Of a stretch of 33,951 nt of DNA, positions 3,386-25,720 are shown in pieces. Made by a program: the position numbers and the translations under genes. This stretch comes from Octopus bimaculoides (lineage: Eukaryota). The notes under the pieces are model-generated. The model was not told the origin of the DNA and made no database searches. It was given only the letters and a program-made list of their open reading frames with translations. The stretch is from positions 63,307,256 through 63,341,206 of the forward strand of contig NC_068985.1 of assembly GCF_001194135.2 (NCBI RefSeq), given 5' to 3'. Within the stretch, counting starts at the first letter, position 1; the number at the start of each line of letters is the position of its first letter.

Positions 3386-3475
3386 NNNNNNNNNNNNNNN
3401 NNNNNNNNNNNNNNNNNNNNNNNNNNNNNNNNNNNNNNNNNNNNNNNNNNNNNNNNNNNNNNNNNNNNNNNNNNN
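3386..3475. other. Assembly gap between (GA)n and (TG)n/(GA)n microsatellites
   Basis: N run flanked by dinucleotide repeats. Confidence 0.99.
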
Positions 3476-6690: not shown

Positions 6691-7644
6691 NNNNNNNNNN
6701 NNNNNNNNNNNNNNNNNNNNNNNNNNNNNNNNNNNNNNNNNNNNNNNNNNNNNNNNNNNNNNNNNNNNNNNNNNNNNNNNNNNNNNNNNNNNNNNNNNNN
6801 NNNNNNNNNNNNNNNNNNNNNNNNNNNNNNNNNNNNNNNNNNNNNNNNNNNNNNNNNNNNNNNNNNNNNNNNNNNNNNNNNNNNNNNNNNNNNNNNNNNN
6901 NNNNNNNNNNNNNNNNNNNNNNNNNNNNNNNNNNNNNNNNNNNNNNNNNNNNNNNNNNNNNNNNNNNNNNNNNNNNNNNNNNNNNNNNNNNNNNNNNNNN
7001 NNNNNNNNNNNNNNNNNNNNNNNNNNNNNNNNNNNNNNNNNNNNNNNNNNNNNNNNNNNNNNNNNNNNNNNNNNNNNNNNNNNNNNNNNNNNNNNNNNNN
7101 NNNNNNNNNNNNNNNNNNNNNNNNNNNNNNNNNNNNNNNNNNNNNNNNNNNNNNNNNNNNNNNNNNNNNNNNNNNNNNNNNNNNNNNNNNNNNNNNNNNN
7201 NNNNNNNNNNNNNNNNNNNNNNNNNNNNNNNNNNNNNNNNNNNNNNNNNNNNNNNNNNNNNNNNNNNNNNNNNNNNNNNNNNNNNNNNNNNNNNNNNNNN
7301 NNNNNNNNNNNNNNNNNNNNNNNNNNNNNNNNNNNNNNNNNNNNNNNNNNNNNNNNNNNNNNNNNNNNNNNNNNNNNNNNNNNNNNNNNNNNNNNNNNNN
7401 NNNNNNNNNNNNNNNNNNNNNNNNNNNNNNNNNNNNNNNNNNNNNNNNNNNNNNNNNNNNNNNNNNNNNNNNNNNNNNNNNNNNNNNNNNNNNNNNNNNN
7501 NNNNNNNNNNNNNNNNNNNNNNNNNNNNNNNNNNNNNNNNNNNNNNNNNNNNNNNNNNNNNNNNNNNNNNNNNNNNNNNNNNNNNNNNNNNNNNNNNNNN
7601 NNNNNNNNNNNNNNNNNNNNNNNNNNNNNNNNNNNNNNNNNNNN
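6691..7644. other. Assembly gap between (TG)n and (CTA)n
   Basis: N run. Confidence 0.99.
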
Positions 7645-8627: not shown

Positions 8628-8739
<112 letters not shown>

Positions 8740-9346
8740 AGCAGATAGATAGATACACACACATACATACATATGTATGTATGTATGTTTTATGAATGTA
8801 TATGTACGGTTGCGTCTTGGTATACATATACCCAGCCATCTCACCTCGTCATCCTTTTAAAGAGTGCTCTCTGTTTACATAAATGTGTGTTTGTGCATGT
8901 GCGCGCGCATGATTTGAGAGGGAGAATTAAAGAGAGGGAGGAGAGAAAGAGAGTGTGTGTGTGTGTGTGGGTGAATAGTTGCGGAACAAAGTAAAGAGGT
9001 TTGTTTCACCAGTAAAAATATGGAAATACAAATATATATATATATATAATAAATAATTAAATAAAAAAAATAAAACTTCGCTGTAAGACTAGATAAATAA
9101 ATAAATAAATAAATGAGTAATGAGTTTCACCGCCGCTGCTGCCTCTGCCTTAGTGTTAACCATATTAACTAATAGAGGGAGGGGGTTGAGAACTCTTCGT
9201 ACTCCCTCACCCTCATTTATCTACATGAGTAGCGGTGGGGTGATGTACAGTAATAGAGATAAGGGAGGAGGTAATGCTTAAGAGGAAGGAAGGGGTGAAG
9301 ACAGCTGAGTAGTAGCAGGTGTACTGCCAGTCGGAAGACAATTCTC

Positions 9347-9352
9347 TCAGTT
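9347..9352 (+). promoter_or_regulatory. Possible Initiator (TCAGTT) for the tropomyosin-like gene
   Basis: TCAGTT lies about 125 bp upstream of the ATG, downstream of a purine/G-rich TATA-less stretch. This is a short motif match only. Confidence 0.25.
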
Positions 9353-9475
9353 CCATATTTCTGCAGCCTGAGAGCGGAGTGCGTTTTCTTCGTTTCTTCT
9401 CAACTCGAACCGGTTCCTTCGAGTGGAATTCTTAATAAACTTTCTTTCTTCTCCGATTGACAGTAAACTTTAGCC

Positions 9476-10000
9476 ATGGATCGTGAAACATATCTGAAAA
9501 AAGTCCAGGCCATCAGAGTGGCCAAAGAAACTGCTATGGACAAGGTGGAGGTCATTGAGGAAAAACTGAAGGCCACCGAGTCCGAAAGGAGCCGCTTGGA
9601 TGAGGAACTGAACTGGTTACAAAAGAAATATTCTAACATGGAGAAAGAACTGGATACTGTGAACAATGACCTGTCTAAAGCCCAGGACATGATGCACTAC
9701 GCCGAAGAAAGAGTTAGCGAGTGTGATACAGAGATCCAGAACTTGCAAAGGAGGATACAAATGTTGGAGTTACAACTTGAGAGAAGTGAAGAAGCTTTGT
9801 CTGTGAAAAAGACCGAAGAAGTAACAAACCAGGAGAAGCTGAAGGAAGCCGAGTTGAGGGCAACAAACGCCGAACGAACGGTGACCAAACTGGAAGAAGA
9901 TCTGGAGAAAATGGAAGTCTCATTGAACGAAGAGAAGGAAAAATATAACCAACTCATTAAAGATTTAGATGATGCTTACAACGATGTAGCATTGTATTAA
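9476..10000 (+). CDS. Short (174 aa) tropomyosin-like coiled-coil protein with an uninterrupted coding sequence
   Basis: Intact ORF with GCCATGG start context and an in-frame TAA at 9464-9466 that fixes the start. Tropomyosin signatures: KKVQAI...AMDK, LQKKYSN.E..LD, RVSECDTEI..L.RRIQMLE..LERSEE, KLKEAE.RA..AERTV.KL, EKEKY....DLD.AY.D..LY-stop. Confidence 0.9.
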   Translation: MDRETYLKKVQAIRVAKETAMDKVEVIEEKLKATESERSRLDEELNWLQKKYSNMEKELDTVNNDLSKAQDMMHYAEERVSECDTEIQNLQRRIQMLELQLERSEEALSVKKTEEVTNQEKLKEAELRATNAERTVTKLEEDLEKMEVSLNEEKEKYNQLIKDLDDAYNDVALY

Positions 10001-10201
10001 AATACAACTGCCTCATACTTAACTTTCTCCTTCCCGTCCGACTTGACTCTTTTGCAATTTTATTTTCTTCCCCTCACGAGAAAGGTAAGAAATTTAATGT
10101 TTTCAGCCAGATATTATTTAAAAGTGAATATTAGCCATAACATCAGACAAACATTATTTCTAATAATGACAATGCAAGCAGCATAAAACAGCGCTGTTAA
10201 C

Positions 10202-10207
10202 AATAAA
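10202..10207 (+). terminator. Candidate polyadenylation signal AATAAA
   Basis: First canonical AATAAA about 200 nt after the stop, followed by an A9 tract at 10220-10228. Confidence 0.4.
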
Positions 10208-11349
10208 AAGCAGTTAATTAAAAAAAAAGATGTAATTAAGATTAGTGGAACATCTCTAATCTTTTTTTATTTTTATATTTTTAAATTGTGAAAATTATTT
10301 GGAGGAAAACAAACCTACTCTGCACCTTCTCTATCGATGTCCTATTTATAATCCAGTTAGTTCACCAGTTAACCAATAATCCAGCGATCATATTGTTTAT
10401 CATTGATTGATTGATGATCACAAAGATCAATATGCCAACGACAGTCACACTATATCACCAACCGGTGTTCTCTAAGTAATTTTATCTCTGTTATTCACAT
10501 TAATCAAACGTTTTAACAAGAAAAAATTTTAAAGGTAAAAGCCAAGCGTTAGCCCTGCCGTGTTTGTAGTTTTGCTGGAAACCAAGTTGTTTGGAACTTT
10601 ATTAACCAGAGACCAACATCACAGGTCACAGTTGAAGCAACCAAGTCTTCTTTAACAACACCTTTGGAAATGTGTGAAAGATCGCCAAGCAAACAATAAT
10701 AAAGCAAAACAAAAACAGAAACAAGAAAAACAATGATTTATTTTGAAAATGAATATTTGCAAGAAGAAAATAAACTTTAAAAATCTATGACTAGAATCTT
10801 CATCTTGGAAATAAATTTGTTTACATTTAATATTTGTTCATTTTTAGTAAAAATAGCGTTAAGTGTCTTGTCGAAGGACCAACATAAACAAAACAACAGA
10901 CAAAAACAAATGTGAACAGCTGTTCCTGAAAGAAAAACTGAAGTCAGTTATATATATATAAAATAGTAAATGATGAAAGATGTACAACAAATCTGAACTA
11001 ATTCCATCATGGAATTGTTTGCCGACTGACTTCAGTATTCTTATTTGTATCCTTTTACTGCTATTTTGATGTCTTAATTCTTCAGTTTTTATTCTAATTG
11101 TTTTTGTTGTTGGCATTTTTATATTTGTTATAATACTGTTTATTTCTTTATTTTTCTTACCAATTTACCCAATTCTTGAGATACACTTCTAGTGTTGCAT
11201 GCGTGGTGGTAGTCGGATATATGAGTGGTGCGAAAATTTATGAATAGAGTAGAGATTCATATTTGTGAATGGGTGAGAAATTTTAGTGAATGAAGCGGAA
11301 AAGTGTATACTACAGTTGTACACACACACACGCGCGCGCGCGCGCGTGT

Positions 11350-11455
11350 ACACACGTATATATATTTGTTTATATACATACATATATATATATATATATA
11401 TACATATATTTATATACATATACATTTATATACATATATATATATATATTTATAT

Positions 11456-11514
<59 letters not shown>

Positions 11515-11540
11515 CATACATATACATGCATATATATATT
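11350..11540. repeat. (TA)n-rich microsatellite
   Basis: Seen directly, preceded by (CA)n(CG)n. Confidence 0.95.
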
Positions 11541-11790
11541 AAGATAATAAGAAAGTAAGATAATGGAGATATAACATTTAATAAAAATTTATTATCTGCA
11601 AAAATCAAACATGGTGACTTACAGCTGTTTCAATTTAGTTAAAAAGATTAAATAGCAATTATTAAAATCATTATATTAGGCTAAATATCTTCAGATACCA
11701 CCCCTTAATGAGGCTAATTTAACCTCTAGTTGAATATATATTTATATATACATAAATATTTATATATATACATACATGGCTGTAATGTGA

Positions 11791-11827
<37 letters not shown>

Positions 11828-12059
11828 CATAGACATACATACACATACATACAAAGATAGAAAAGTCAATCTGAATCGTATTAAAGTGATGACCTTCATC
11901 ATAGATGAGTCATCTCCTGGCACGTCAGTATTCCACCGTCAATTCCCACTCGAATTCATTGTTATCATACTTTTACAGACTACTCTTAAGGACATCTCTG
12001 AAGAATTTCATTTATTCTCTTCAGACTTACTTTTTCATTCCTTTAATAACTGATAGTGG

Positions 12060-12980
12060 AAAAAAAAATGTAAAATTTAGTTGTTTCGTGTCATCATCAT
12101 CATTTACTCGTCTTTTCAGGGAAGCAAGGATTGTACTCGAACCTTTTTTATGTAGTGTTGTGTCTGCCCACATCTTGGAAGTATTCAACATTTTAGACCA
12201 CCTACCCAAGAAACCAAATAGTTGGAATAAGTTCTTACATGTTGGGGATTTGATTATGTAACACCTTTGTTTTAGTTATGTTGGTAATTAAAACCCATCT
12301 TTCAAAGACTTCATGGAAAATATCGGTAATTGTCTGCAAAAGCACCAACTGTGTCATCAATGTAATACTGAAGTCGTAGTTTTCCTTTTTAGTACGGAGT
12401 CTGACAAGATTAAATATCTTGCTATTTGTGTGGACAAAACCCGAGTATAACTGAGAGGAAGATGAAAAAGAGGGTAGATGCAATCACACCTTCCTGTTTT
12501 ACTCCAGTTCTGTCAGTCAAATATCGTCAGGCTCGAGTGACTTGTTAGTCTTTAGGGAGTAAATTGCTTTTGTTGGGTTTTTCTAATGTCAGGTGATGTG
12601 GCTAAGAATTTCAGCATTGACCTTTGTACAATGTTGTCCAGAGATCTTTCGTTCAAAGTACACTCACAATTAAACAAATCATAGAAATATTCTAACCCTC
12701 AATCATTAGCAGCTGCTTGTTCTTTTATACGTTTTGTACCGTCTAAACCGTGTAGAACCCATTGCACATACACCATTGAATGCTTTAATCACACTAGTGA
12801 AACCTCTTATGTCATTCATATCAGTTGCTTTAATCTGTCACCAATTGTTCTTCATTGCTTGTCCTTGCTTGGTGAAAAGTATTTCCATTGTGCATATTAT
12901 TCTCCTCATGTGGTTGAACATGAAAAGTCGCATTCTTCGTGTTGATCTGCTTTTACTTGGCTGTTGGCCTCATCAAATTA
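12060..12980 (-). mobile_element. Decayed RTE-clade LINE fragment (linker and RT), internally deleted
   Basis: Minus-strand remnants FDEANSQVK, MKNNW*QIKATDMNDIRGF..IKA, YDLFNC, GVKQEGVIASTLFFIFLSVIL, KIFNLVRLRTK, INITKTKVL and ASLKRRV follow the RTE/BovB-type order. Confidence 0.7.
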
Positions 12981-13529
12981 GTCTTACACACATGTATGTA
13001 TGTATGTATGTATGTATGTATGTATGCAAGTATGTACAGTAAGCCCTCGACTATTGCGGATGTTACGTTCCAAAAACTTCGCGATAGGTGAAAATCTGCG
13101 AAATGGAAACTGTACTGTATATTTATTATTATTATTTTTATAATTTGTATATATTATAAATGTAAAACAACACCATAGAGGAATCGACATATGCTTAAAT
13201 AATAAAGCGCGATATAGCGAGGGATTATTGTATACATACATAATCTTACGTGTCTTGTATAACTATATGCATGTCCAAACTTACTTTCTATTGTAATTAA
13301 ATGCGATGCAAATCTTGTTTCGTGTAGCTGCTGTGTTGAAACGGTCAGCACTGGAAGCTCGAGGTCAACGAATTCGTTTGTTCTATATACAAACGTCGTT
13401 ATGTGAAAGATAATAATAATGAATTGTTATGCAACCACAAAGCTACATGAGTTGAAGTGGTTACAATTGATTTCATACACCCCAGTATTCGAATGGTAAC
13501 TGATTTTTTTCAAAACTGTCTCGATTGAA

Positions 13530-13955
13530 ATAATAATGATAATCCTTTCTACTAGAGGCACAAGGCCTGAAATTTGTGAGAGGGGGATAGTCGATTACAT
13601 TATAATAATGGTTTCAAATTTTGCCACAAGGGCGCCAATTTGGGGAGAGACAATAAATCAATTACATCGACCCCAGTGTTTCACTAGTACTTAATTTATC
13701 GACCCCAAAAGGATGAAAGTCAAAGTCGACCTCGGCGGAATTTGAACTCAGAATGTAAAGACGGACGAAATGCTGCATTTTCCTGGAGTACTAACGATTC
13801 TGTCAGCTCACCGCAATAATAATAATAATGATCCTTTCTACTGGAAGCACAATTTGGGGGAAGGGATTAAGTCGATTACATCGACCCCAGTGCATAACTG
13901 GTACTTATTTAATCGACCCTGAAAGGATGAAAGGCAAAGTCGACCCCGGTGGAAT
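13530..13955 (-). mobile_element. Three nested or tandem tRNA-derived SINE copies, each ending in (TTA)n
   Basis: Repeated GTCGATTACATCGACCCCAGT...TATCGACCCC.AAAGGATGAAAG.CAAAGTCGACCTCGGCGGAATTTGAACTC, whose reverse complement carries a B box GAGTTCAAATTCC. Copies are separated by AAT runs. Confidence 0.85.
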
Positions 13956-13991
13956 AATAATTAAAATAATAATAATAATATTATTATTATT

Positions 13992-14135
13992 GAGCGAGCC
14001 AGCAGAATCGTTAGCATACCGGGTAAAATGCTTAACGGCATTTATTCCGTCGTTACGTTCTGAGTTCAAATTCCACCGAGGTCGACATTGCCTTTCATCC
14101 TCTCGGGGTCGATAAAATAAGTATCAGTTGAACTC
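13992..14135 (+). mobile_element. tRNA-derived SINE, 5' part
   Basis: A-box-like GAGCCAGCAGAATCG, B box GAGTTCAAATTCC, then GAGGTCGAC.TTGCCTTTCATCC..CGGGGTCGATAAA. Confidence 0.85.
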
Positions 14136-15249
14136 TAAATGTTTGGAGCCACTTTTTCCACATTTTTTCCTTTATTTGTTAAAATGTCATCAAAAATAAA
14201 ATAGAATAAACAGGAGGTGGCGACAGCTGTGGCGGTGAGTTAATATTAAACAAATACCTATTTTCTGTTCAGATCGTATCAGCAGGTGAGCTTTTGGTAA
14301 GGAACTAACGCATGACTGTAGTAACCACAGTGCTGTACTGACTAAAGTACTGCGCTGAAGTATAGTATAGAATACGGTGGTGCACTGTAGTAGAGCACAT
14401 ACTGTAGTAGTATTCAGAAGTACCCTCAGATCCTGCCTGTGAAACTGTTGAAAGACTTAACAGCAGCTTATGTAGGAAAGTGAGATTTCTTATAGGTAAA
14501 ACACGACAGCAAAAAGAATTAAAACTAAAAAGAGAAGAGAAGAGAACATTACATATTGACATGCAGACATAGTGGTGGGGGTGGTAAGCATCCAACGAAC
14601 TAGAGCTGTAGATGTTCAGTTCATTTACGCTACTTGTACTCAAAATAGCCAACCAGCCGCTCTCAGTCCATTTGTAGTCGAAATGGAGTTACTATGTCAC
14701 AACGGTTTTTTTTTGGACTATTCCTGTTTATTTAACTTTATCAAGAAAAAATTTGAACAAAACAATGAGAAAATATTCCCTATTCAAATATAGAAAGGGT
14801 TATATATTTGGTAGTTTGACAACTTGCCGAAATACGACGGTTATATATTTTTAGAGAAATGTATATAATTTTATCAAGTTGTAAAGATGCAGTTGATACA
14901 TTGAAGACCTTTTGTACTGGTTTGTAAGAGTTCTGAATGAACTGTTTAGACATTGTTGAACCTCCTTCAGTATAAATGAAGAGCTGTCGATGACATTGAA
15001 GATAATGCCGCCAATATTCAATATTCAATTCGTTTGTAGTTGTAGAAGATAGGGCAATGAGTTTTTATAAAATCTTTGGTCAAACAAATTTGGAGAGACG
15101 AAATAAAATTGTATATTTAAGAATTTATAAAACTTATATAATTCATAGGACTGTACTATCTCTGTACAATCAGCTGATGGGAACAGGACACGAAACTACG
15201 CCAGTTTGGTTAGTAGCATCAACAGGTCTGCAGCATCACTTGTAGGGGT

Positions 15250-15960
15250 TCCTTTCGGAAATACCTTAAAAGCCTACTCGTGGCCTTTACATTAGGGGTT
15301 CCCACATCGCGGCAAAGCTCTCCCTAATATTTTTTGTTTTTAGAAGCATTCGCATCACCATCAGTGTTTCTGGCACTTACACGGTGCTGGTACCGAAGAT
15401 CTCACCGTCTCTCTCGATGTCCTTCCTTCGTGCTATGAGGGTTATCAATTCTTTGTTGGCCTTCCTCACTATTACGAAGTTTTGTGTTTGTACTGTTGGT
15501 TGTTGCTATTGGTAGTGATGGTGGTGGGTTCTTTCCAGGGCTGTTGCAGTGGTGTTGGAGGGGTTGATGTTGCTGTAGATGTGGGTGTATTTTCTCTGTT
15601 TTTTGATGTGTGTTGGTGTGGGGCAATGTACCTTATTGTGTTTTATTTTTGATTTGTTTGGTTTGGGGGGTTTCATTGTTTGTTATTCACAACGTAAGTA
15701 TCGTTGCCGTTTAAGTTGTCGAGGCTACTGTTGGTCTTGTTTTTTTCCCTATTATAGTTTTTGTTGTTGCAGTGATGGTGGTGGTGGTGGTGTAGGTAAT
15801 GGCCATGCTCGTTGTTTTATTGTTGATGCTGTTAATTGATGTCTTTGGTATTGTTTCATTTATTGTGGAGAATTCAGCTTCGTAATTGGAATGAAATTCA
15901 TGCGCTGTATTGTCGTTGTTGTGGCTGCTGTTTGTTGTTATAGTGGTGGAATCTCCTCTT
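15250..15960 (-). mobile_element. L1/Tx1-clade ORF1 3' remnant
   Basis: Minus strand encodes NFVIVRKANKELITLIARRKDIERDGEIFGTSTV*VPETLMVMRML, homologous to NFLLVRKSNKQLMDLLSRRKDAEREGVIFGTSTFQVPETLVLVRML at about 33600-33740. Both are preceded by a T/N/Q-rich low-complexity tract. Confidence 0.75.
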
Positions 15961-16252
15961 CAGTCTCTGTTATACTTAGTATAAACTCTGCATTAATACT
16001 AATAGCAACTAAGTTCATTTAAACTCAGATCGACCCTGATCTAGTAGGCTTGTCGTCAAATGCATTCTAATCATTTCAATCCTATATTTATTTTTCAGGC
16101 ACAGTTTAGAACTACATTATCTTATGTCTCCTGTATTTTATTTAGACACAGTTTATCTAGGACTACATTATCTAATACGTTCTTTGCATTTCAAGAACTT
16201 CGTCAGTCCACAACTCCGAGTTTATAGTTGACGTCAATCTTAAAGTGATTTC

Positions 16253-17146
16253 GGATCTTTCTGATTTGGCGGACACCATTTGTTTTCTAACGAAACACTT
16301 TCAAACTTGGGATACTGATAGAATGTGTCATATAAAACATCTTTTTCTCTTAGCCTTGTTAAGAAAAGTTTGTATATTCGAAGTTATTTCATGTTAAAAG
16401 TTGTCGTATTTCGGTAATTTCAACCAATCACTGACGTCTATTGAGGTGAAAACAATTACTGCTGTGGTTTGTCAACAACACGTTGTGGCGGTGTAATGGG
16501 ATCTTTTCCCTTGAATAAAATTAGTGCCGTTGTTTGTCAACAACAACTATCGGCAGTACTGTTATTTATGACATCGTTCGTGCGTTTGTACTGGTTTTAG
16601 CTTTAGGGTTTTAGGGTTAGGGTTCGGGTTTTAGAGTTAGGGTTAGGGTTAGGGTTTTACGGTTAGGGTTAGGGTTATGAGCATTTTTGCCAAATTTGGC
16701 GAAAATATGTTCAATACACCGCCACAAATTTTTCGCCAAATTTGGCAAAAATACTCATAACCCTAACCCTAACCCTAACCCTAATCCTAACCCTAAAACC
16801 CTAAAGCTAAAACCAGTACAAACGCACGAACGATGTCATAAATAACAGTACCACCGATAGTTGTTGTTTACAAACAACGGCACTAATTTTATTCAAGGGA
16901 ATACACCGCCACAACGTGTTGTTGACAAACCACAGCAGTGATTGTTTTCACCTCAATAGACGTCAGTGATTGGTTGAAATTACCGAAATACGACAACTTT
17001 TAACATGAAATAACTTCGAATATCAAAATTTTTCTCTGTTCTATAAGACAAAATATACAAGTATACGAAGTTTTAAAGTGTTTCGGTAGAAAACACACTA
17101 AATAAAAACTAAATAAAAAATGGTGTCCGCCAAATCAGAAAGATCC
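16253..17146. mobile_element. 894-bp foldback MITE with whole-length inverted arms, internal TTAGGG/CCCTAA tracts and a probable 8-bp TSD
   Basis: Termini GGATCTTTCTGATTTGGCGGACACCATT and AATGGTGTCCGCCAAATCAGAAAGATCC are exact reverse complements. Inner arms are near-identical, with a spacer of only about 13-24 nt. Flanks are GTGATTTC (16245-16252) and ATGATTTC (17147-17154). Confidence 0.9.
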
Positions 17147-18896
17147 ATGATTTCTTGCCACTGTTGTAAGAAGTATGAATGAATTCAATGTAATCTAATG
17201 TTCTGTCTCACTGGAATCATAAGAGAGATTTGAACTCAGAACAGAAATAATATTTTGACTTTTCACAAATAATAAGTTTAAAAAAGGAAAATTTATATTC
17301 GTAGATATACGTTTGGTAACTTCATTAAATTACATGAATATCACTTTGGTTGGTTGACATGCCTAGTACTAATTTCACTTGTTATTAAAAATTTAGTCTA
17401 AAAACTAATGTTACCCTGTAGGGATTGATTCAATTTGAATAAATGAAGGATTTGAAAGGAAGCTATCAGAGTTTAAGGCTATGAATGCAGCGAGTTCCAT
17501 CTTCGTACAAATACAGTTTTCAGATATACTATAGTTACTATTATAGTTTATTAATAATAATCACATTATTATTAATATGTTTAATATTATTAATAATATT
17601 GCGATTACGACTTAGATCATCCGTTGTTAACATGATTTACTTCAGTTTGATTTAAATCCAATAATCTCTTTAAACTTAACTTACAACACTTTTGTATGTT
17701 TTTCTTTCATAAATTTCCTTAACTTATTATATTCAGAGAGTTTTTATCTATTTTTGGCTAATCGATGCCAGCCAGCAATGGAATCTAGCTGTACCCGGCT
17801 TTTATTTCAAAACAACAAACACTGTAATACTGCAGATAGCTTAATCTTAAAAGAAAGATTTATGAGCGGATAAGTCTCAAAAGCAAAACCAAAAAACTGG
17901 GAATACCGTCACAGAGACTGCAATAGAACAAGTTCATAAAAAAAAAACCTACAGACGTAAGGGCTATGGCTACATGTTATTCGCTTATTTGGTAGCCTCG
18001 GAAAGAATTTCTTCAAGAAAACAGCATTTTAACAGTTTTTATTCTTGGAGAAAACATTTCAAAAAACTTTAATCAATCAATAAATAATAAATGTAATGAA
18101 TTATTTGAGATTTTTAAAATCTTCAATTACAAGTCTTTAAAACGAACCAACGATATACTGGAAATCAAAAACATTTGGACTTGGTAATACATTCACTGAC
18201 CAAACTCAGACAGTCTTCAATGAACTTGAATCAGTGAAATTATTGGCTGGTTTTTGAACGTTTGGTGAAAATTAAACAAGAATGAAGAAAAGCGTACTAA
18301 CTGCAGATGGAATCTACTGGAACCACATGCTTAATCTGCACTTCCGCTCACCATAATACCAATAAGGCTGCGTTGCTGCTTAGTTTCTGGGGTTTTCTCC
18401 TAGCATCATTTTTTTAAAATTTCTTATCTGAAATAACTTGAAAATGTATTTGGCTGGCGTTTTCACTCTGGAAATTAAAAGCTAACCAAATCTGAAAAAT
18501 AAAACTGAATTATAATTTCAAAAGCAAATTTCTTGTTTTACTTTATAAACAAATTATAATTTTTTTCACTAATTATTAATCATCCAGGAGGCAAGCAACA
18601 TCGATGAAAGAAGGTAAGTTCTTGGTGAGACAAGACCCAAACCTAATTTCTGTACCATTTGACTCACACCAGTACATATTTTAAGGGAAACATGAACATT
18701 ATATTGGGCGCACACCGAGTAAGATGGCTGTTACAAAGACGTCGAACTTCTGAACTAGAAGTTCTGGTCATGGTTAACCATATGTGTCAAATGCATCTTC
18801 AGGTGTTGGAAATTTTACAAGATATTGGAATGTTTAAAGAAAAAGCAGTAAATCTTCTTGACCAAGGATAGGCTTAAAGCAGTTTCTACGAATATC

Positions 18897-20318: not shown

Positions 20319-20762
20319 NNNNNNNNNNNNNNNNNNNNNNNNNNNNNNNNNNNNNNNNNNNNNNNNNNNNNNNNNNNNNNNNNNNNNNNNNNNNNNNNNN
20401 NNNNNNNNNNNNNNNNNNNNNNNNNNNNNNNNNNNNNNNNNNNNNNNNNNNNNNNNNNNNNNNNNNNNNNNNNNNNNNNNNNNNNNNNNNNNNNNNNNNN
20501 NNNNNNNNNNNNNNNNNNNNNNNNNNNNNNNNNNNNNNNNNNNNNNNNNNNNNNNNNNNNNNNNNNNNNNNNNNNNNNNNNNNNNNNNNNNNNNNNNNNN
20601 NNNNNNNNNNNNNNNNNNNNNNNNNNNNNNNNNNNNNNNNNNNNNNNNNNNNNNNNNNNNNNNNNNNNNNNNNNNNNNNNNNNNNNNNNNNNNNNNNNNN
20701 NNNNNNNNNNNNNNNNNNNNNNNNNNNNNNNNNNNNNNNNNNNNNNNNNNNNNNNNNNNNNN
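20319..20762. other. Assembly gap between (CA)n and (GA)n
   Basis: N run. Confidence 0.99.
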
Positions 20763-23670: not shown

Positions 23671-25720
23671 CCAAAAGTCTGAAAACCCGAAATGCTTGTC
23701 CTGAACGGATAATGCCCCCTCCCACGACAGTGCTAAGCACTTTTGTATGCTGTCCATAATCTTCGACTTCAGAGTCCTCCAGAAGTGACCACTCAGACTG
23801 TTCTCGTCGATGAGAACAATCTGAGTCAATCTTAGAGGTATCCATTTAATATGACCATCGAGCAGATTCCACTGTACTTTGTGGTGACTGAGCTTCTGAA
23901 GACGGAAACGAAAACCGACAACCACCAGATAGTACTTTAGATTGATCCAAATTGATCATTACTCCGCCAAAGCTGGATCTGTTTCTGACTCGTTCTACGA
24001 TGTATTGTATGAGGTGGAGGTTGTTATGGATAGACCTGTCGGAAATCGTACAAGTCTGCGCGTCTCCGACTACATTACCGACAATAAGCAACAACCTCTT
24101 GGCGAGCACCTTAGCTATAATCTTTAATTCAATGTTGAATAGAGTTAAGGGCCTGAAAATTTCCATCACGTTCTCCTTTTTCAGCAATGTCACCACTTCC
24201 CAGCTCACACAACTGGGGATGCTTCCAGCTGCAGTAGACGGCTACCAAAACAACCATGTCGAAATATAGCTCATAAAGCAGATAATTCAATCTTGGTGAT
24301 ATGCTCCCCACACAGTGGCTTAGCAAATCTGCTACTTCCTCCACTGAAATCAGTTTCTCGCAACACTCAACCTCCGTCAAATAGATGCGGCAAACCATGG
24401 AGGTAGGCCTCAAAGCCTACTGTCGCAGATATACCGTTCCTCGAAAACAGCAATGCTGCTGCCACTCGGGCTCAACCGACGGCTTTTAGCCTTCATGTTT
24501 CAGCGCATGCATCTTAGTTCGGACAATGAAATCTTCATGTTTTGTGTCGAAGAAATTGCTGAGGGCCATTCTGGCCGCTAGTACGTCTTTTGTTATTCCT
24601 CCTTTATGTGCCCCATCTAAACTATTGACTTGTCTGTTCTATGCTGTTGTTTACTAAAGCGATTTCTTTGCTAAAACTAACAGATGCCTCTTTGACTTTC
24701 CTTTTTAGTGAAATCCATCACTTGATAGCTGCTTCTGTCAATTCTCGTTTAACTAGTATACTAATCTGACACCCGAAATCTTCCTGTGACGGGGAGGACG
24801 TGTTCTTCTTCCGGTAATCTGACCCTTGTCTATTTGTCTTTTCTAGGTTGACTGTGAAGTTCTCAAATTTTTGTCTGAATAGCCAACGATCTGAAACTAT
24901 GGACAACTGATACAATGCCTATCAGCTAGCCAGATAAAAATCCTAAGTATGACATGGATAACCCACTGAGATTTGACCATGTCCACATTAGCGTGTTCGG
25001 TAAATCGAGAAGAAGCTTGTCAGGCAGCTGGAAATACCTGAGAAGGTTTGCAAGGTTTTTGCACCCCACTCCCTAATAAGATATTCCCACATAATCTTTA
25101 CTTTCGTTCAACCTATCGATTGGATCTAAAGAAACCGTAGTCACCTATGCGTCATGACCTATCCAAAACAGCACCGCCACTCCACACCACTTGATCCATG
25201 CCGACTGGAGGTAGTTTAAACTTCGTAGTCGTCCAGAAAGAGAGCGAGTGATTGCGTTCCGGAAATCCTAGTCTCACTAGTAGCTACTGCATCTAGACGT
25301 AGTGACCTGAGGTCGTTGAGCAGGTGACTCTGTTTTCACGCTACCCACCAGCGCCCAGTCTTAGAGTTACCATTCTAAGAGGAGGGTCAGAAACAAAAAG
25401 AACAGTTAGTCACTTGCCCTAGTCTTGGGCGGTCCTTTTGGGGTCTCTGTACAAGCCATCTAAGTTCCTCCTGTCTAATAAATTTTTTAATCCTCCCACA
25501 TCACGTGGCAAACGCTTCCTCAAAATGTGATACATTGTTGGAGTCGTCCTTACTAGAACCTTCTCTTCGAGAGTTTCGGAAATGATGAGACTATCAAGAC
25601 CCACGCCTATTATCAAAATTTTATCTTTGTTAGAGTGTACAAACTGCATCAATTCCTCGTTATCCTTTCAGAAAACTGTGTAGTCAAGAAGTTCGTCCAT
25701 AAGATGTTGCTTTAATTGTT
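23670..25720 (-). mobile_element. Decayed L1/Tx1-clade LINE: ORF1 end (25720-25419) and ORF2 from ATG at 25373 (APE endonuclease and partial RT)
   Basis: Remnants KQSHLLNDLRSLRLDAVATSETR (APE N-terminus), ISVEEVADLL...YELY, VVTLLKK...FRPLTLFNIELKIIAKVLAKRL...AQTC.ISDRSIHNNLHLIQYIVERV...INLDQSK and WEGALSVQDK, with internal deletions. Confidence 0.85.

What the first reader, a model, noticed from the sequence alone, without database searches (positions are those of the whole stretch)
9476..10000. Miniature tropomyosin: both ends conserved, about 112 central residues (16 heptads) missing
Seen: an intact 174-aa ORF. By-eye alignment to a recalled 284-aa mollusc tropomyosin places residues 1-109 at offset +2 (RRIQ at 92-95 vs 90-93) and residues 121-174 at offset -110 (ending Y174 = Y284). 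The difference of 112 aa equals 16 heptads, so the coiled-coil register is preserved, which suggests selection for a functional dimer rather than decay. Established: animal tropomyosins are typically about 284 or 248 aa and span 7 or 6 actins, while about 161-aa yeast Tpm2/Cdc8 span 4. Inference: this could be an animal tropomyosin spanning about 4 actins. It would lack the central region containing the G126/D137 positions and the troponin-T-associated part, implying a non-muscle or unusual filament role.
Basis: partly seen in the sequence, partly recalled or inferred. Interest (0 to 1): 0.72.

Follow-up and report, generated by a model that had tools for sequence, protein, structure and literature searches.

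The report
Octopus mini-tropomyosin gene, real and expressed
This is a real, strongly expressed octopus gene for a 174-residue tropomyosin that lacks exactly 16 heptads of the normal 284-residue protein, and it belongs to a small, uncharacterised cephalopod family of shortened tropomyosins whose lengths suggest they span four to six actin subunits rather than seven.

Summary
Window 9476-10000 (+) is an intact 174-aa ORF in Octopus bimaculoides. It passes Pfam Tropomyosin (75.6 bits, cutoff 38.6). Formal one-gap alignment to five 284-aa tropomyosins always gives a 112-residue gap (16 heptads). The heptad frame is unbroken from end to end.

It is not a misassembly: four DNA runs cover it with no differences. 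It is not a dead retrocopy: many RNA runs carry it as a spliced mRNA of about 2.5 kb, with the whole CDS in exon 1 and a 6.7-kb GT..AG intron in the 3'UTR.

The deletion ends lie inside exons 3 and 7 of the multi-exon canonical gene, so this is not exon skipping.

The same junction occurs, without gaps, in relatives. These are a 171-aa gene in three octopods (dN/dS 0.16), a 209-aa tandem neighbour, and a 247-aa transcript from an unidentified species. Their lengths step by 38 residues.

The most likely function is a parallel coiled-coil dimer lying along F-actin over about four subunits. That is inferred, not shown. No orthologue-based dN/dS could be obtained for this gene itself.

Verdict: a new variant of a known kind, moderately interesting.

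The parts
9271..11046 (+). Exon 1 of the mRNA: 5'UTR, complete CDS and the first 1046 nt of the 3'UTR. There are two clusters of 5' ends, 9271-9296 and 9415-9418.
   Evidence: RNA contigs of eight runs lie contiguously to 11046 with no internal joints. X3, X4, X5 and X11 start at 9271-9296, X28 starts at 9335, and X32, X36 and X38 start at 9415-9418.
9464..9466 (+). In-frame TAA upstream of the start codon. The ORF cannot extend 5' within exon 1.
   Evidence: Sequence read directly.
9476..10000 (+). CDS of the 174-aa short tropomyosin (paralogue A), stop codon included. It has no introns.
9476..9814 (+). Residues 1-113. A 2-residue N-terminal extension, then the equivalent of canonical residues 1-111 (periods 1-3; exons 1a, 2 and most of 3).
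   Evidence: One-gap alignment offset -2. K8K9, LQKKY 48-52, C83, RRIQ 92-95 and ERSEE 102-106 match the cephalopod canonical protein.
9815..9835 (+). Residues 114-120 (EEVTNQE): the junction zone, with no clear homology to either side of the deletion. It is helical and in register.
9836..9997 (+). Residues 121-174, equivalent to canonical residues 231-284 (end of exon 7, exon 8 'AAEAERTVSKLQKEVDRLE' type, exon 9 muscle type ending in Y).
   Evidence: One-gap alignment offset +110. Pfam stretch 119-171 matches profile 187-239 of 242. Canonical exons are mapped in L007.
11047..17736 (+). Intron of 6690 nt (GT...AG), lying entirely in the 3'UTR.
   Evidence: All RNA contigs jump from 11046 to 17737. 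Donor gta and acceptor cag read directly.
17737..18460 (+). Exon 2 (3'UTR only). The RNA contigs end at 18372-18460. The true 3' end is probably a little after the AATAAA at 18498.
18498..18503 (+). Candidate polyadenylation signal AATAAA.
   Evidence: Its use is inferred, not shown.

Best explanation
Shown:
- The window carries a real, transcribed, spliced two-exon gene of Octopus bimaculoides. Its single-exon CDS encodes a 174-residue tropomyosin paralogue.
- Relative to the 284-residue cephalopod muscle-type tropomyosin, it keeps the first ~111 and last ~54 residues and lacks a net 112 residues (16 heptads). The a/d heptad pattern therefore runs unbroken from residue 3 to 174.
- It is one of at least three old lineages of a family that shares this junction: A (this gene), B/C (171 and 209 aa, a tandem pair on another chromosome) and D (247 aa, species unknown). 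All have intron-free CDSs where DNA is available.

Inferred:
- The family arose once. The likely route is retroposition of a high-molecular-weight tropomyosin mRNA plus an in-frame internal deletion between the homologous period-3 and period-6 regions. The canonical gene has many exons and sits on a third chromosome.
- The protein forms a parallel two-chain coiled coil that lies along F-actin. It would use the four retained quasi-repeats (basic pairs at 8/9, 50/51, 92/93 and R134; an acidic periodicity of about 20 residues) and polymerise head to tail through its retained N and C ends. Each molecule would cover about four actin subunits instead of seven.
- It would lack the central G126/D137 region and the mid-molecule troponin-associated region.
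- The 209- and 247-aa relatives, each longer by one 38-residue period-2 module, would cover five and six subunits.
For: - Identity and source of the gene.
- Gap of 112 in every comparison.
- Unbroken heptads, 82% apolar a/d.
- AlphaFold2 gives one helix 3-173 with pLDDT 96, and 98 across the junction.
- Expression: the CDS is held entire in 19 runs of 8 studies returned by an RNA-filtered search (14 labelled RNA, 5 of unrecorded kind). Contig depths are up to about 1000-2000 in X32, X36 and X38, and about 6e5 summed in X33. The GT..AG splice is identical in all eight runs laid across it.
- Assembly is sound.
- Family: P0006, P0105, P0106, P0107, P0108. Single-exon ORFs sit in L002, L003 and L004. 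The alignment of A, B, C and D is gap-free from the period-2 module through the junction to the C end.
- Selection on relatives: B, O. bimaculoides vs O. vulgaris, dN/dS 0.16. B and C vs Argonauta have dN 0.08-0.10 with saturated dS.
- Origin: the short family groups together, apart from the canonical sequences. A is 46% identical to the O. bimaculoides canonical protein over the shared part, against 24-33% to other canonical tropomyosins. It shares the cephalopod C81.
- Canonical exon boundaries (exons 6-9 mapped in L007; the 125/126 end of exon 3 inferred from where isoforms diverge) put both deletion ends inside exons.
- Acidic-residue power at period 19.7-20 is 3.5-4.3 in A, against 6.6-8.0 in 284-aa proteins. 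That is about what is expected for its length.
- Precedent: yeast Tpm2p spans four actins and Tpm1p five (PMC2120352).
Against: - No biochemical or localisation data exist.
- Length arithmetic is imperfect: 174 aa needs an end overlap of about 17 residues to fit four actin periods of 39.3. The retained basic pairs are 42 residues apart.
- The N terminus (MDRETYLKKV) differs from the canonical MDAIKKKM and carries two extra residues.
- Surface (b/c/f) identity to the canonical protein is only 34%.
- Purifying selection was measured on paralogues B and C, not on A. The only trace of an A orthologue is fragmentary: organism B, 80-88% DNA identity confined to the CDS, with 3 synonymous and 3 non-synonymous codon changes visible.
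- No A orthologue is present in the protein collections searched.
- The 3'UTR intron lies 1046 nt after the stop. In vertebrates that arrangement would mark an mRNA for nonsense-mediated decay.
Confidence: 0.5

Rival explanations
1. A tropomyosin-derived coiled coil that no longer works as an actin-lateral binder and has taken on another role. It could be an adaptor or a structural filament protein, as the atypical Drosophila Tm1-I/C became a kinesin/RNA adaptor.
For: Only 44% identity to the parent, with surface positions least conserved at 34%. The N terminus is altered. Very high transcript abundance in one sample suggests a bulk structural product. Relatives C and D carry 38-residue insertions that shift the heptad frame by +3, unlike any canonical tropomyosin. 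Precedent: PMC5286366.
Against: The periodicity of about 20 residues in acidic residues, the basic pairs aligned with canonical K6/K7, K48/K49, R90/R91 and R244, and both terminal segments are all retained. Family lengths step by 38 residues, about one actin period.
Confidence: 0.25
2. A modulator of canonical tropomyosin cables. Because it keeps both overlap-forming ends, it would insert into or terminate head-to-tail chains of the 284-aa protein, or heterodimerise with it. This would change the register or length of the cable rather than form cables of its own.
For: Both terminal regions that form the overlap complex are the parts retained. The gene is expressed in many samples, where canonical tropomyosin, a ubiquitous protein, is presumably also present; that co-expression was not checked.
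Against: The termini are the less conserved parts of the retained sequence. Three separate lineages with module-number variation fit a self-sufficient polymer better. There is no direct evidence.
Confidence: 0.12
3. A transcribed processed pseudogene: a retrocopy with an internal deletion and no protein function.
For: The CDS is intron-free and sits on a different chromosome from the multi-exon parent. No dN/dS was obtained for A itself. The intron is in the 3'UTR.
Against: The ORF is open over 174 codons despite divergence to 44% identity (chance about 7e-6). The heptad pattern is as clean as in canonical proteins. The start context is good and no other ORF competes. The mRNA is abundant and spliced. 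Sister genes with the same junction are under purifying selection. In organism B the similarity begins exactly at the start codon.
Confidence: 0.04
4. An assembly or annotation artefact: the 336 bp are really present, or the ORF is a collapsed version of the canonical gene.
For: The window has three N gaps elsewhere.
Against: Four DNA runs from three studies and at least eight RNA runs give contigs across the whole ORF with no differences or joints. All sampled 31-mers are present in 20 runs of DNA and RNA. The canonical gene is a separate locus.
Confidence: 0.01

Closest known systems
Canonical cephalopod/mollusc muscle tropomyosin (284 aa; the Tod p 1 / Oct v 1 type; O. bimaculoides gene on CM046604.1)
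   Same: Pfam PF00261. Collinear N-terminal ~111 and C-terminal ~54 residues. 46% identity over the shared, database-verified part. Shared C81 and the RRIQ, ERSEE and AERTV motifs. Unbroken heptads. An acidic periodicity of about 20 residues.
   Different: 112 residues shorter (about periods 4-6 missing). A 2-residue N-terminal extension. The CDS is a single exon rather than about nine alternatively spliced exons. It lies on a different chromosome.
Fungal short tropomyosins: S. pombe Cdc8 and S. cerevisiae Tpm2 (four actins) and Tpm1 (five actins). The lengths 161, 161 and 199 aa are from my own knowledge.
   Same: The same length class. The cephalopod family also has members that differ by one 38-residue module (171 vs 209 vs 247 aa), as Tpm2 and Tpm1 differ by one actin period. 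Whole-length collinear match to a 161-aa 'Tropomyosin' chain in the PDB (8puz; its species was not checked), E 7e-4.
   Different: Not orthologous. The octopus protein groups with mollusc tropomyosins and is derived from a 284-aa ancestor by deletion. It is 10-13 residues longer than the fungal four-actin forms.
Metazoan low-molecular-weight tropomyosins (about 245-248 aa, six actins), e.g. O. vulgaris P0125
   Same: Shorter tropomyosin variants with a retained C-terminal half.
   Different: LMW forms arise by an alternative promoter and exon 1b replacing exons 1a+2. Here the N terminus is the HMW type, the loss is internal, and it is fixed in a separate gene.
Drosophila atypical tropomyosin Tm1-I/C
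   Same: A tropomyosin-derived protein with a non-canonical role. It is a precedent for the neofunctionalisation rival (PMC5286366).
   Different: Tm1-I/C is an isoform of the canonical gene with unstructured extensions. The octopus protein is predicted as pure coiled coil from a separate gene.

Membership tests
Tropomyosin (Pfam PF00261) | Sequence matches the family profile above the curated threshold | tested here: met
   75.6 bits against a cutoff of 38.6, E 5.3e-21. PDB tropomyosins at E about 1e-24.
Tropomyosin (Pfam PF00261) | Uninterrupted heptad repeat / continuous alpha-helix over the whole length | tested here: met
   A single heptad frame in all 21 sliding windows, with 82% apolar a/d. 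AlphaFold2 gives a helix 3-173 at pLDDT 96. Dimer formation itself was not modelled.
Tropomyosin (Pfam PF00261) | Periodicity of about 19.7 / 39.3 residues in the acidic and basic actin-binding zones | tested here: inconclusive
   Acidic power is 3.5-4.3 at period 19.7-20, against 6.6-8.0 in 284-aa proteins. That is about as expected for the shorter length, but weak on its own. Basic pairs at 8, 50 and 92 plus R134 are spaced 42 residues apart.
Tropomyosin (Pfam PF00261) | Length equal to a whole number of actin periods plus a short end overlap | tested here: inconclusive
   174 aa fits four periods only with an overlap of about 17 residues; 171 aa (B) needs about 14. Family lengths of 171, 209 and 247 step by 38.
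Tropomyosin (Pfam PF00261) | Conserved N- and C-terminal overlap sequences | tested here: inconclusive
   K8K9 and the C-terminal Y are retained, but the N terminus is MDRETYLKKV with two extra residues. About 34% identity in the first 38 residues, measured against a canonical sequence recalled from memory for residues 1-80.
Tropomyosin (Pfam PF00261) | Cooperative binding along F-actin and head-to-tail polymerisation | not testable with these tools
   Needs co-sedimentation, viscosity or cryo-EM.
Canonical metazoan TPM gene products (HMW about 284 aa, LMW about 248 aa) | Seven or six actin periods encoded by a multi-exon, alternatively spliced gene | tested here: not met
   174 aa from a single-exon CDS. 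The canonical O. bimaculoides gene has separate exons 6, 7, 8 and 9 with alternatives.
Exon-skipped isoform or retrocopy of an exon-skipped mRNA | Deletion ends coincide with exon boundaries of the parent gene | tested here: not met
   The ends fall at canonical ~107-118 and ~219-231, inside exon 3 (81-125) and exon 7 (214-234). Exons 6-9 were mapped in L007. The 125/126 and 164/165 boundaries are inferred from where isoforms P0114, P0125 and P0137 diverge.
Processed retrogene | Intron-free CDS, at a locus unlinked to a multi-exon parent | tested here: met
   A is on CM046605.1, B/C on CM046607.1 and the parent on CM046604.1. The CDS crosses the parental 80/81 boundary without a break.
Processed retrogene | Poly(A) remnant and target-site duplications | not tested
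   At this level of divergence these are expected to have decayed, and I did not search for them. The present mRNA has its own 3'UTR intron.
Fungal four-actin tropomyosins (Cdc8/Tpm2) | Orthology with the fungal clade | tested here: not met
   E 7e-4 to the 161-aa PDB tropomyosin chain, against 1e-24 to animal tropomyosins. It groups with mollusc canonical sequences.

The most novel reading that the evidence does not exclude
Cephalopods have evolved a separate, intron-free gene family of modular mini-tropomyosins (171/174, 209 and 247 residues, in steps of one 38-residue period). These would act as four-, five- and six-actin rulers and mark actin filament populations distinct from those coated by the seven-actin protein. 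That would be an animal counterpart, reached independently, of the fungal Tpm2/Tpm1 pair. The window gene would be a very abundant structural component of at least one tissue.
Probability: 0.3. Interest if true: 0.7.

Novelty: new variant of a known kind. Interest (0 to 1): 0.55.

Why it matters
From my own knowledge, animal tropomyosins are described as six- or seven-actin molecules, and four- and five-actin forms are known from fungi. A conserved, highly expressed animal family of shorter forms with exact heptad-preserving surgery would matter in three ways.

- It would be a natural experiment on how tropomyosin length, period number and the central G126/D137 region affect actin binding, cable geometry and myosin regulation.
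- It would add an unannotated class of actin-filament regulators to cephalopod cell biology.
- Automated pipelines already label the relatives with shellfish-allergen names such as 'Tod p 1.0102' and 'Por p 1.0101'. Knowing that they are truncated paralogues is useful for allergen and proteomic databases.

Tried and rejected
1. Exon-skipping origin: rejected. I mapped canonical exons 6-9 in L007 and inferred the earlier boundaries from isoform differences. Both deletion ends lie inside exons.
2. Misassembly: rejected.
3. The word-index protein search with the single sequence found only distant 284-aa hits. The exact sequence is not in the clustered collection. The exhaustive HMMER search and a profile search were needed to find the family.
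4. Orthologue of A for dN/dS. I laid contigs of organisms B, C, D, F and G at 80% likeness. Only organism B gave fragments (9475-9579, 9651-9708, 9907-9952), too little to rebuild a CDS.
6. Foldseek of the single-helix model against the PDB returned nothing, which is uninformative for a lone helix.
7. Full canonical gene structure: only the 3' 10 kb could be fetched.
8. Literature searches found no description of a short cephalopod tropomyosin. SRR9970006 is not mentioned in the library, so the species of relative D is unknown.
9. No second family member lies in the window.
10. The bootstrap values of the NJ tree were partly lost on re-rooting. I rely only on the groupings and pairwise identities.

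Caveat: the 284-aa octopus query used was written from memory. Residues 81-284 agree with database proteins P0114 and P0125 apart from a few residues, but residues 1-80 are unverified. All conclusions also hold with the database sequences P0011, P0035, P0031 and P0001.

Full report
**Where the window comes from.** The exact 174-aa product is encoded on chromosome CM046605.1 of Octopus bimaculoides assembly GCA_001194135.2, at about 63.3 Mb. The window is AT-rich. It contains microsatellites, three N gaps (3386-3475, 6691-7644, 20319-20762) and decayed retroelement fragments. The short tropomyosin gene is the only convincing protein-coding gene in it.

**Checking the observation.**
- The ORF at 9476..10000 (+) is intact. 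An in-frame stop lies 12 nt upstream.
- It scores 75.6 bits on Pfam Tropomyosin, against a cutoff of 38.6. The best stretch is at the C-terminal end of the profile.
- phmmer against the PDB gives E about 1e-24 to vertebrate alpha-tropomyosins, with two overlapping alignments. One is at the N-terminal offset (6-172 to 4-166) and one at the C-terminal offset (35-171 to 145-281).
- I scored every possible alignment with a single gap against five 284-aa tropomyosins: Haliotis P0011, two database proteins of unknown species, an ant Tm2, and an octopus sequence I wrote from memory. Residues 81-284 of that recalled sequence I later confirmed against P0114 and P0125.
- In all five comparisons the best solution was N-part offset -2, C-part offset +110 and gap 112. 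It beat any other gap size by 46-82 BLOSUM62 units. Relatives B and P0107 also give 112.
- With mollusc references the breakpoint lies at residues 111-120. With more distant references it moves earlier, because tropomyosin periods resemble each other. The net gap does not change.
- Residues 114-120 have no clear counterpart on either side.
- The heptad frame is the same in every sliding window (a = 3+7k). 82% of a/d positions are apolar, against 76% in Haliotis tropomyosin.
- AlphaFold2 predicts one helix from 3 to 173 with pLDDT 96, and 98 across the junction.

**Not an artefact, not silent.**
- DNA contigs from four runs of three studies cover 9100-10400 with no differences, indels or joints. 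All sampled 31-mers are present in 20 DNA and RNA runs.
- An RNA-filtered search returned 19 runs of 8 studies that hold the whole CDS; 14 are labelled RNA and 5 are of unrecorded kind.
- Assembled transcripts of about 2.4-2.5 kb run from 9271-9296 (or 9415-9418 in other samples) to 11046. They then continue at 17737 and end at 18372-18460.
- The skipped 6690 nt start with GT and end with AG on the + strand.
- The gene therefore has two exons, with the entire CDS in exon 1 and the only intron in the 3'UTR, 1046 nt after the stop codon.
- Contig depth is about 13-240 in some runs and about 1000-2000 in X32, X36 and X38. In X33 it is about 6e5, summed over thousands of error-variant contigs.
- Contig depth is a crude measure and tissue labels are hidden. 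Even so, the mRNA is clearly abundant in some samples.
- The spliced mRNA has no other ORF longer than 42 aa.

**The family.**
- The exhaustive HMMER scan of 1.84 billion representatives found only two clusters closer than canonical tropomyosins: a 171-aa protein and a 122-aa fragment.
- A profile search named them: Argonauta hians 'tropomyosin-2-like' (171 aa), an O. vulgaris hypothetical protein (171 aa), O. bimaculoides 'tropomyosin Por p 1.0101' (193-aa model), and unnamed transcriptome proteins (180, 122 and 91 aa).
- Paralogue B: the genomic loci show an intact single-exon 171-aa ORF in all three octopods (L002:14172-14687, L003 and L004:10001-10516).
- Paralogue C: about 7-9 kb upstream of B in O. 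bimaculoides and A. hians there is a second single-exon ORF of 209 aa.
- Relative D: the 953-nt polyadenylated Logan contig from SRR9970006 encodes a 247-aa relative once one base of an A-run is discounted.
- A and B have one copy of a 38-residue period-2-like module, C has two and D has three. Downstream of the module, all four align without a single gap through the junction to the C terminus.
- The 112-residue deletion therefore happened once, in a common ancestor.
- A, B/C and D are about equally distant from each other (41-47% identity) and group together apart from the canonical sequences.
- B has dN/dS 0.16 between O. bimaculoides and O. vulgaris (dS 0.20). Against Argonauta, B and C have dN 0.08-0.10 with saturated dS.

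**Origin.**
- The canonical O. bimaculoides tropomyosin gene is on CM046604.1. In the 10 kb I could fetch, it has three alternative exons 6, one exon 7 (residues 214-234), two alternative exons 8 and two alternative exons 9.
- Isoform comparisons give further boundaries at 125/126 and 164/165. The gene is therefore organised like vertebrate TPM genes, a comparison made from my own knowledge.
- The deletion ends lie inside exon 3 and exon 7, so exon skipping is excluded.
- A uses the HMW N terminus, the 'AAEAERTV...' exon 8 type and the muscle-type exon 9. It crosses the 80/81 exon boundary without a break and keeps the cephalopod Cys81.
- Intron-free CDSs at unlinked loci point to retroposition of a processed mRNA.
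- The in-frame loss between the homologous ends of periods 3 and 6 could have occurred at or after that step. This step is inference.

**Likely mechanism.**
- What is retained is what a tropomyosin needs to be a coiled coil with two polymerisable ends and several actin-binding periods.
- Basic pairs align with canonical K6/K7, K48/K49 and R90/R91, and R134 aligns with R244. The LQKKY, RRIQ and AERTV motifs are kept. The acidic periodicity of about 20 residues is about as strong as expected for the shorter length.
- The family's length series of 171/174, 209 and 247, in steps of 38, is hard to explain except as counting actin periods. It parallels yeast Tpm2p (four actins) and Tpm1p (five) (PMC2120352).
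- I therefore favour a four-actin tropomyosin, at about 0.5.

Caveats:
- The length fits four periods only with an unusually long overlap, and the basic pairs are 42 residues apart rather than 39.3.
- The N terminus is altered, and surface identity to the parent is 34%.
- The extra modules in C and D shift the heptad frame by +3.
- Selection on A itself is unmeasured. The only trace of an orthologue is an 869-nt DNA contig of another species, whose similarity (80-88%) starts exactly at the start codon.

Rivals are a neofunctionalised coiled coil (0.25), a modulator of canonical cables (0.12), a transcribed pseudogene (0.04) and an artefact (0.01).

**Comparison with what is known, and novelty.**
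- It meets the sequence and coiled-coil criteria of the tropomyosin family.
- It fails the criteria of a canonical metazoan TPM product (length, exon structure) and of an exon-skipped isoform.
- It is not related by descent to the fungal short forms it resembles in size.
- Relatives exist in databases only under automated names, some borrowed from shellfish allergens.
- Five literature searches found no description of the family.
- I rate it a new variant of a known kind, interest about 0.55. The gene and family are solid. The functional claim that would make them important is still untested.

Noticed in passing
L002:4537-5166 and L002:14172-14687 (O. bimaculoides CM046607.1); L004:2415-3044 and 10001-10516 (Argonauta hians): A tandem pair of single-exon short-tropomyosin genes, C (209 aa) upstream of B (171 aa), conserved between Octopus and Argonauta. 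No C copy was seen within 10 kb upstream of B in the O. vulgaris locus L003.
   Followed up: partly
C residues about 25-100 (L002:4537-5166); D residues about 25-138 (L006): The extra 38-residue period-2-like modules in C (one extra) and D (two extra) each shift the heptad frame by +3 (0 to 3 to 6). This is a stammer-like discontinuity that canonical tropomyosin lacks.
   Followed up: partly
L002:10001-14687 (RefSeq-type model P0106, 193 aa): The database model for O. bimaculoides B replaces the first 29 residues with 51 residues from an upstream exon, although an intact 171-aa ORF with the normal MEACKKKM start lies in the genome. This is either an annotation artefact or an alternative 5' exon.
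   Followed up: no
window 9271-10300 in run X33: Summed contig depth is about 6e5, spread over more than 4000 short contigs with small indels. That is two to four orders of magnitude above the other RNA runs. The sample type is hidden, so this is unexplained. It suggests either a tissue where this is a top transcript or an unusual library.
   Followed up: partly
window 9271-9296, 9335 and 9415-9418: Transcript contigs start at different places in different runs. In X36, a 68-nt fold-back contig maps to 9410-9447 on the + strand and 9418-9447 on the - strand, which suggests a main cap site near 9417 in the high-expression samples.
   Followed up: no
window 10451: T>A difference in the 3'UTR in RNA runs X5, X28 and X36 but not in others. 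The four DNA runs laid (X1, X13, X15, X17) do not show it. Probably a polymorphism. No A-to-G editing-type changes were seen in the CDS.
   Followed up: no
window 3386-3475, 6691-7644, 20319-20762: Assembly gaps (runs of N) flanked by CA/GA/TC microsatellites. A long (CA)n lies at about 8631-8735, just upstream of the gene.
   Followed up: no
window 8924-9170 and 11280-11900: AT/TA- and CA-rich simple repeats attract thousands of RNA contigs at very high depth and produce many spurious 'joints'. These are repeat artefacts, not splicing of this gene.
   Followed up: partly
window 23846-24413 (-): ORF fragments with a weak reverse-transcriptase match (RVT_1, E 4e-4, below cutoff). A decayed retroelement.
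   Followed up: partly
window 17111-17147 (inside the intron): A segment of 30-36 nt is shared with several unrelated RNA contigs in four runs. Probably part of a dispersed repeat.
   Followed up: no
P0059 (177 aa): A different short tropomyosin prediction from another animal joins residues of about 1-70 directly to exon 6 onward. It looks like exon skipping or a gene-model artefact, and is not related to the cephalopod deletion.
   Followed up: no
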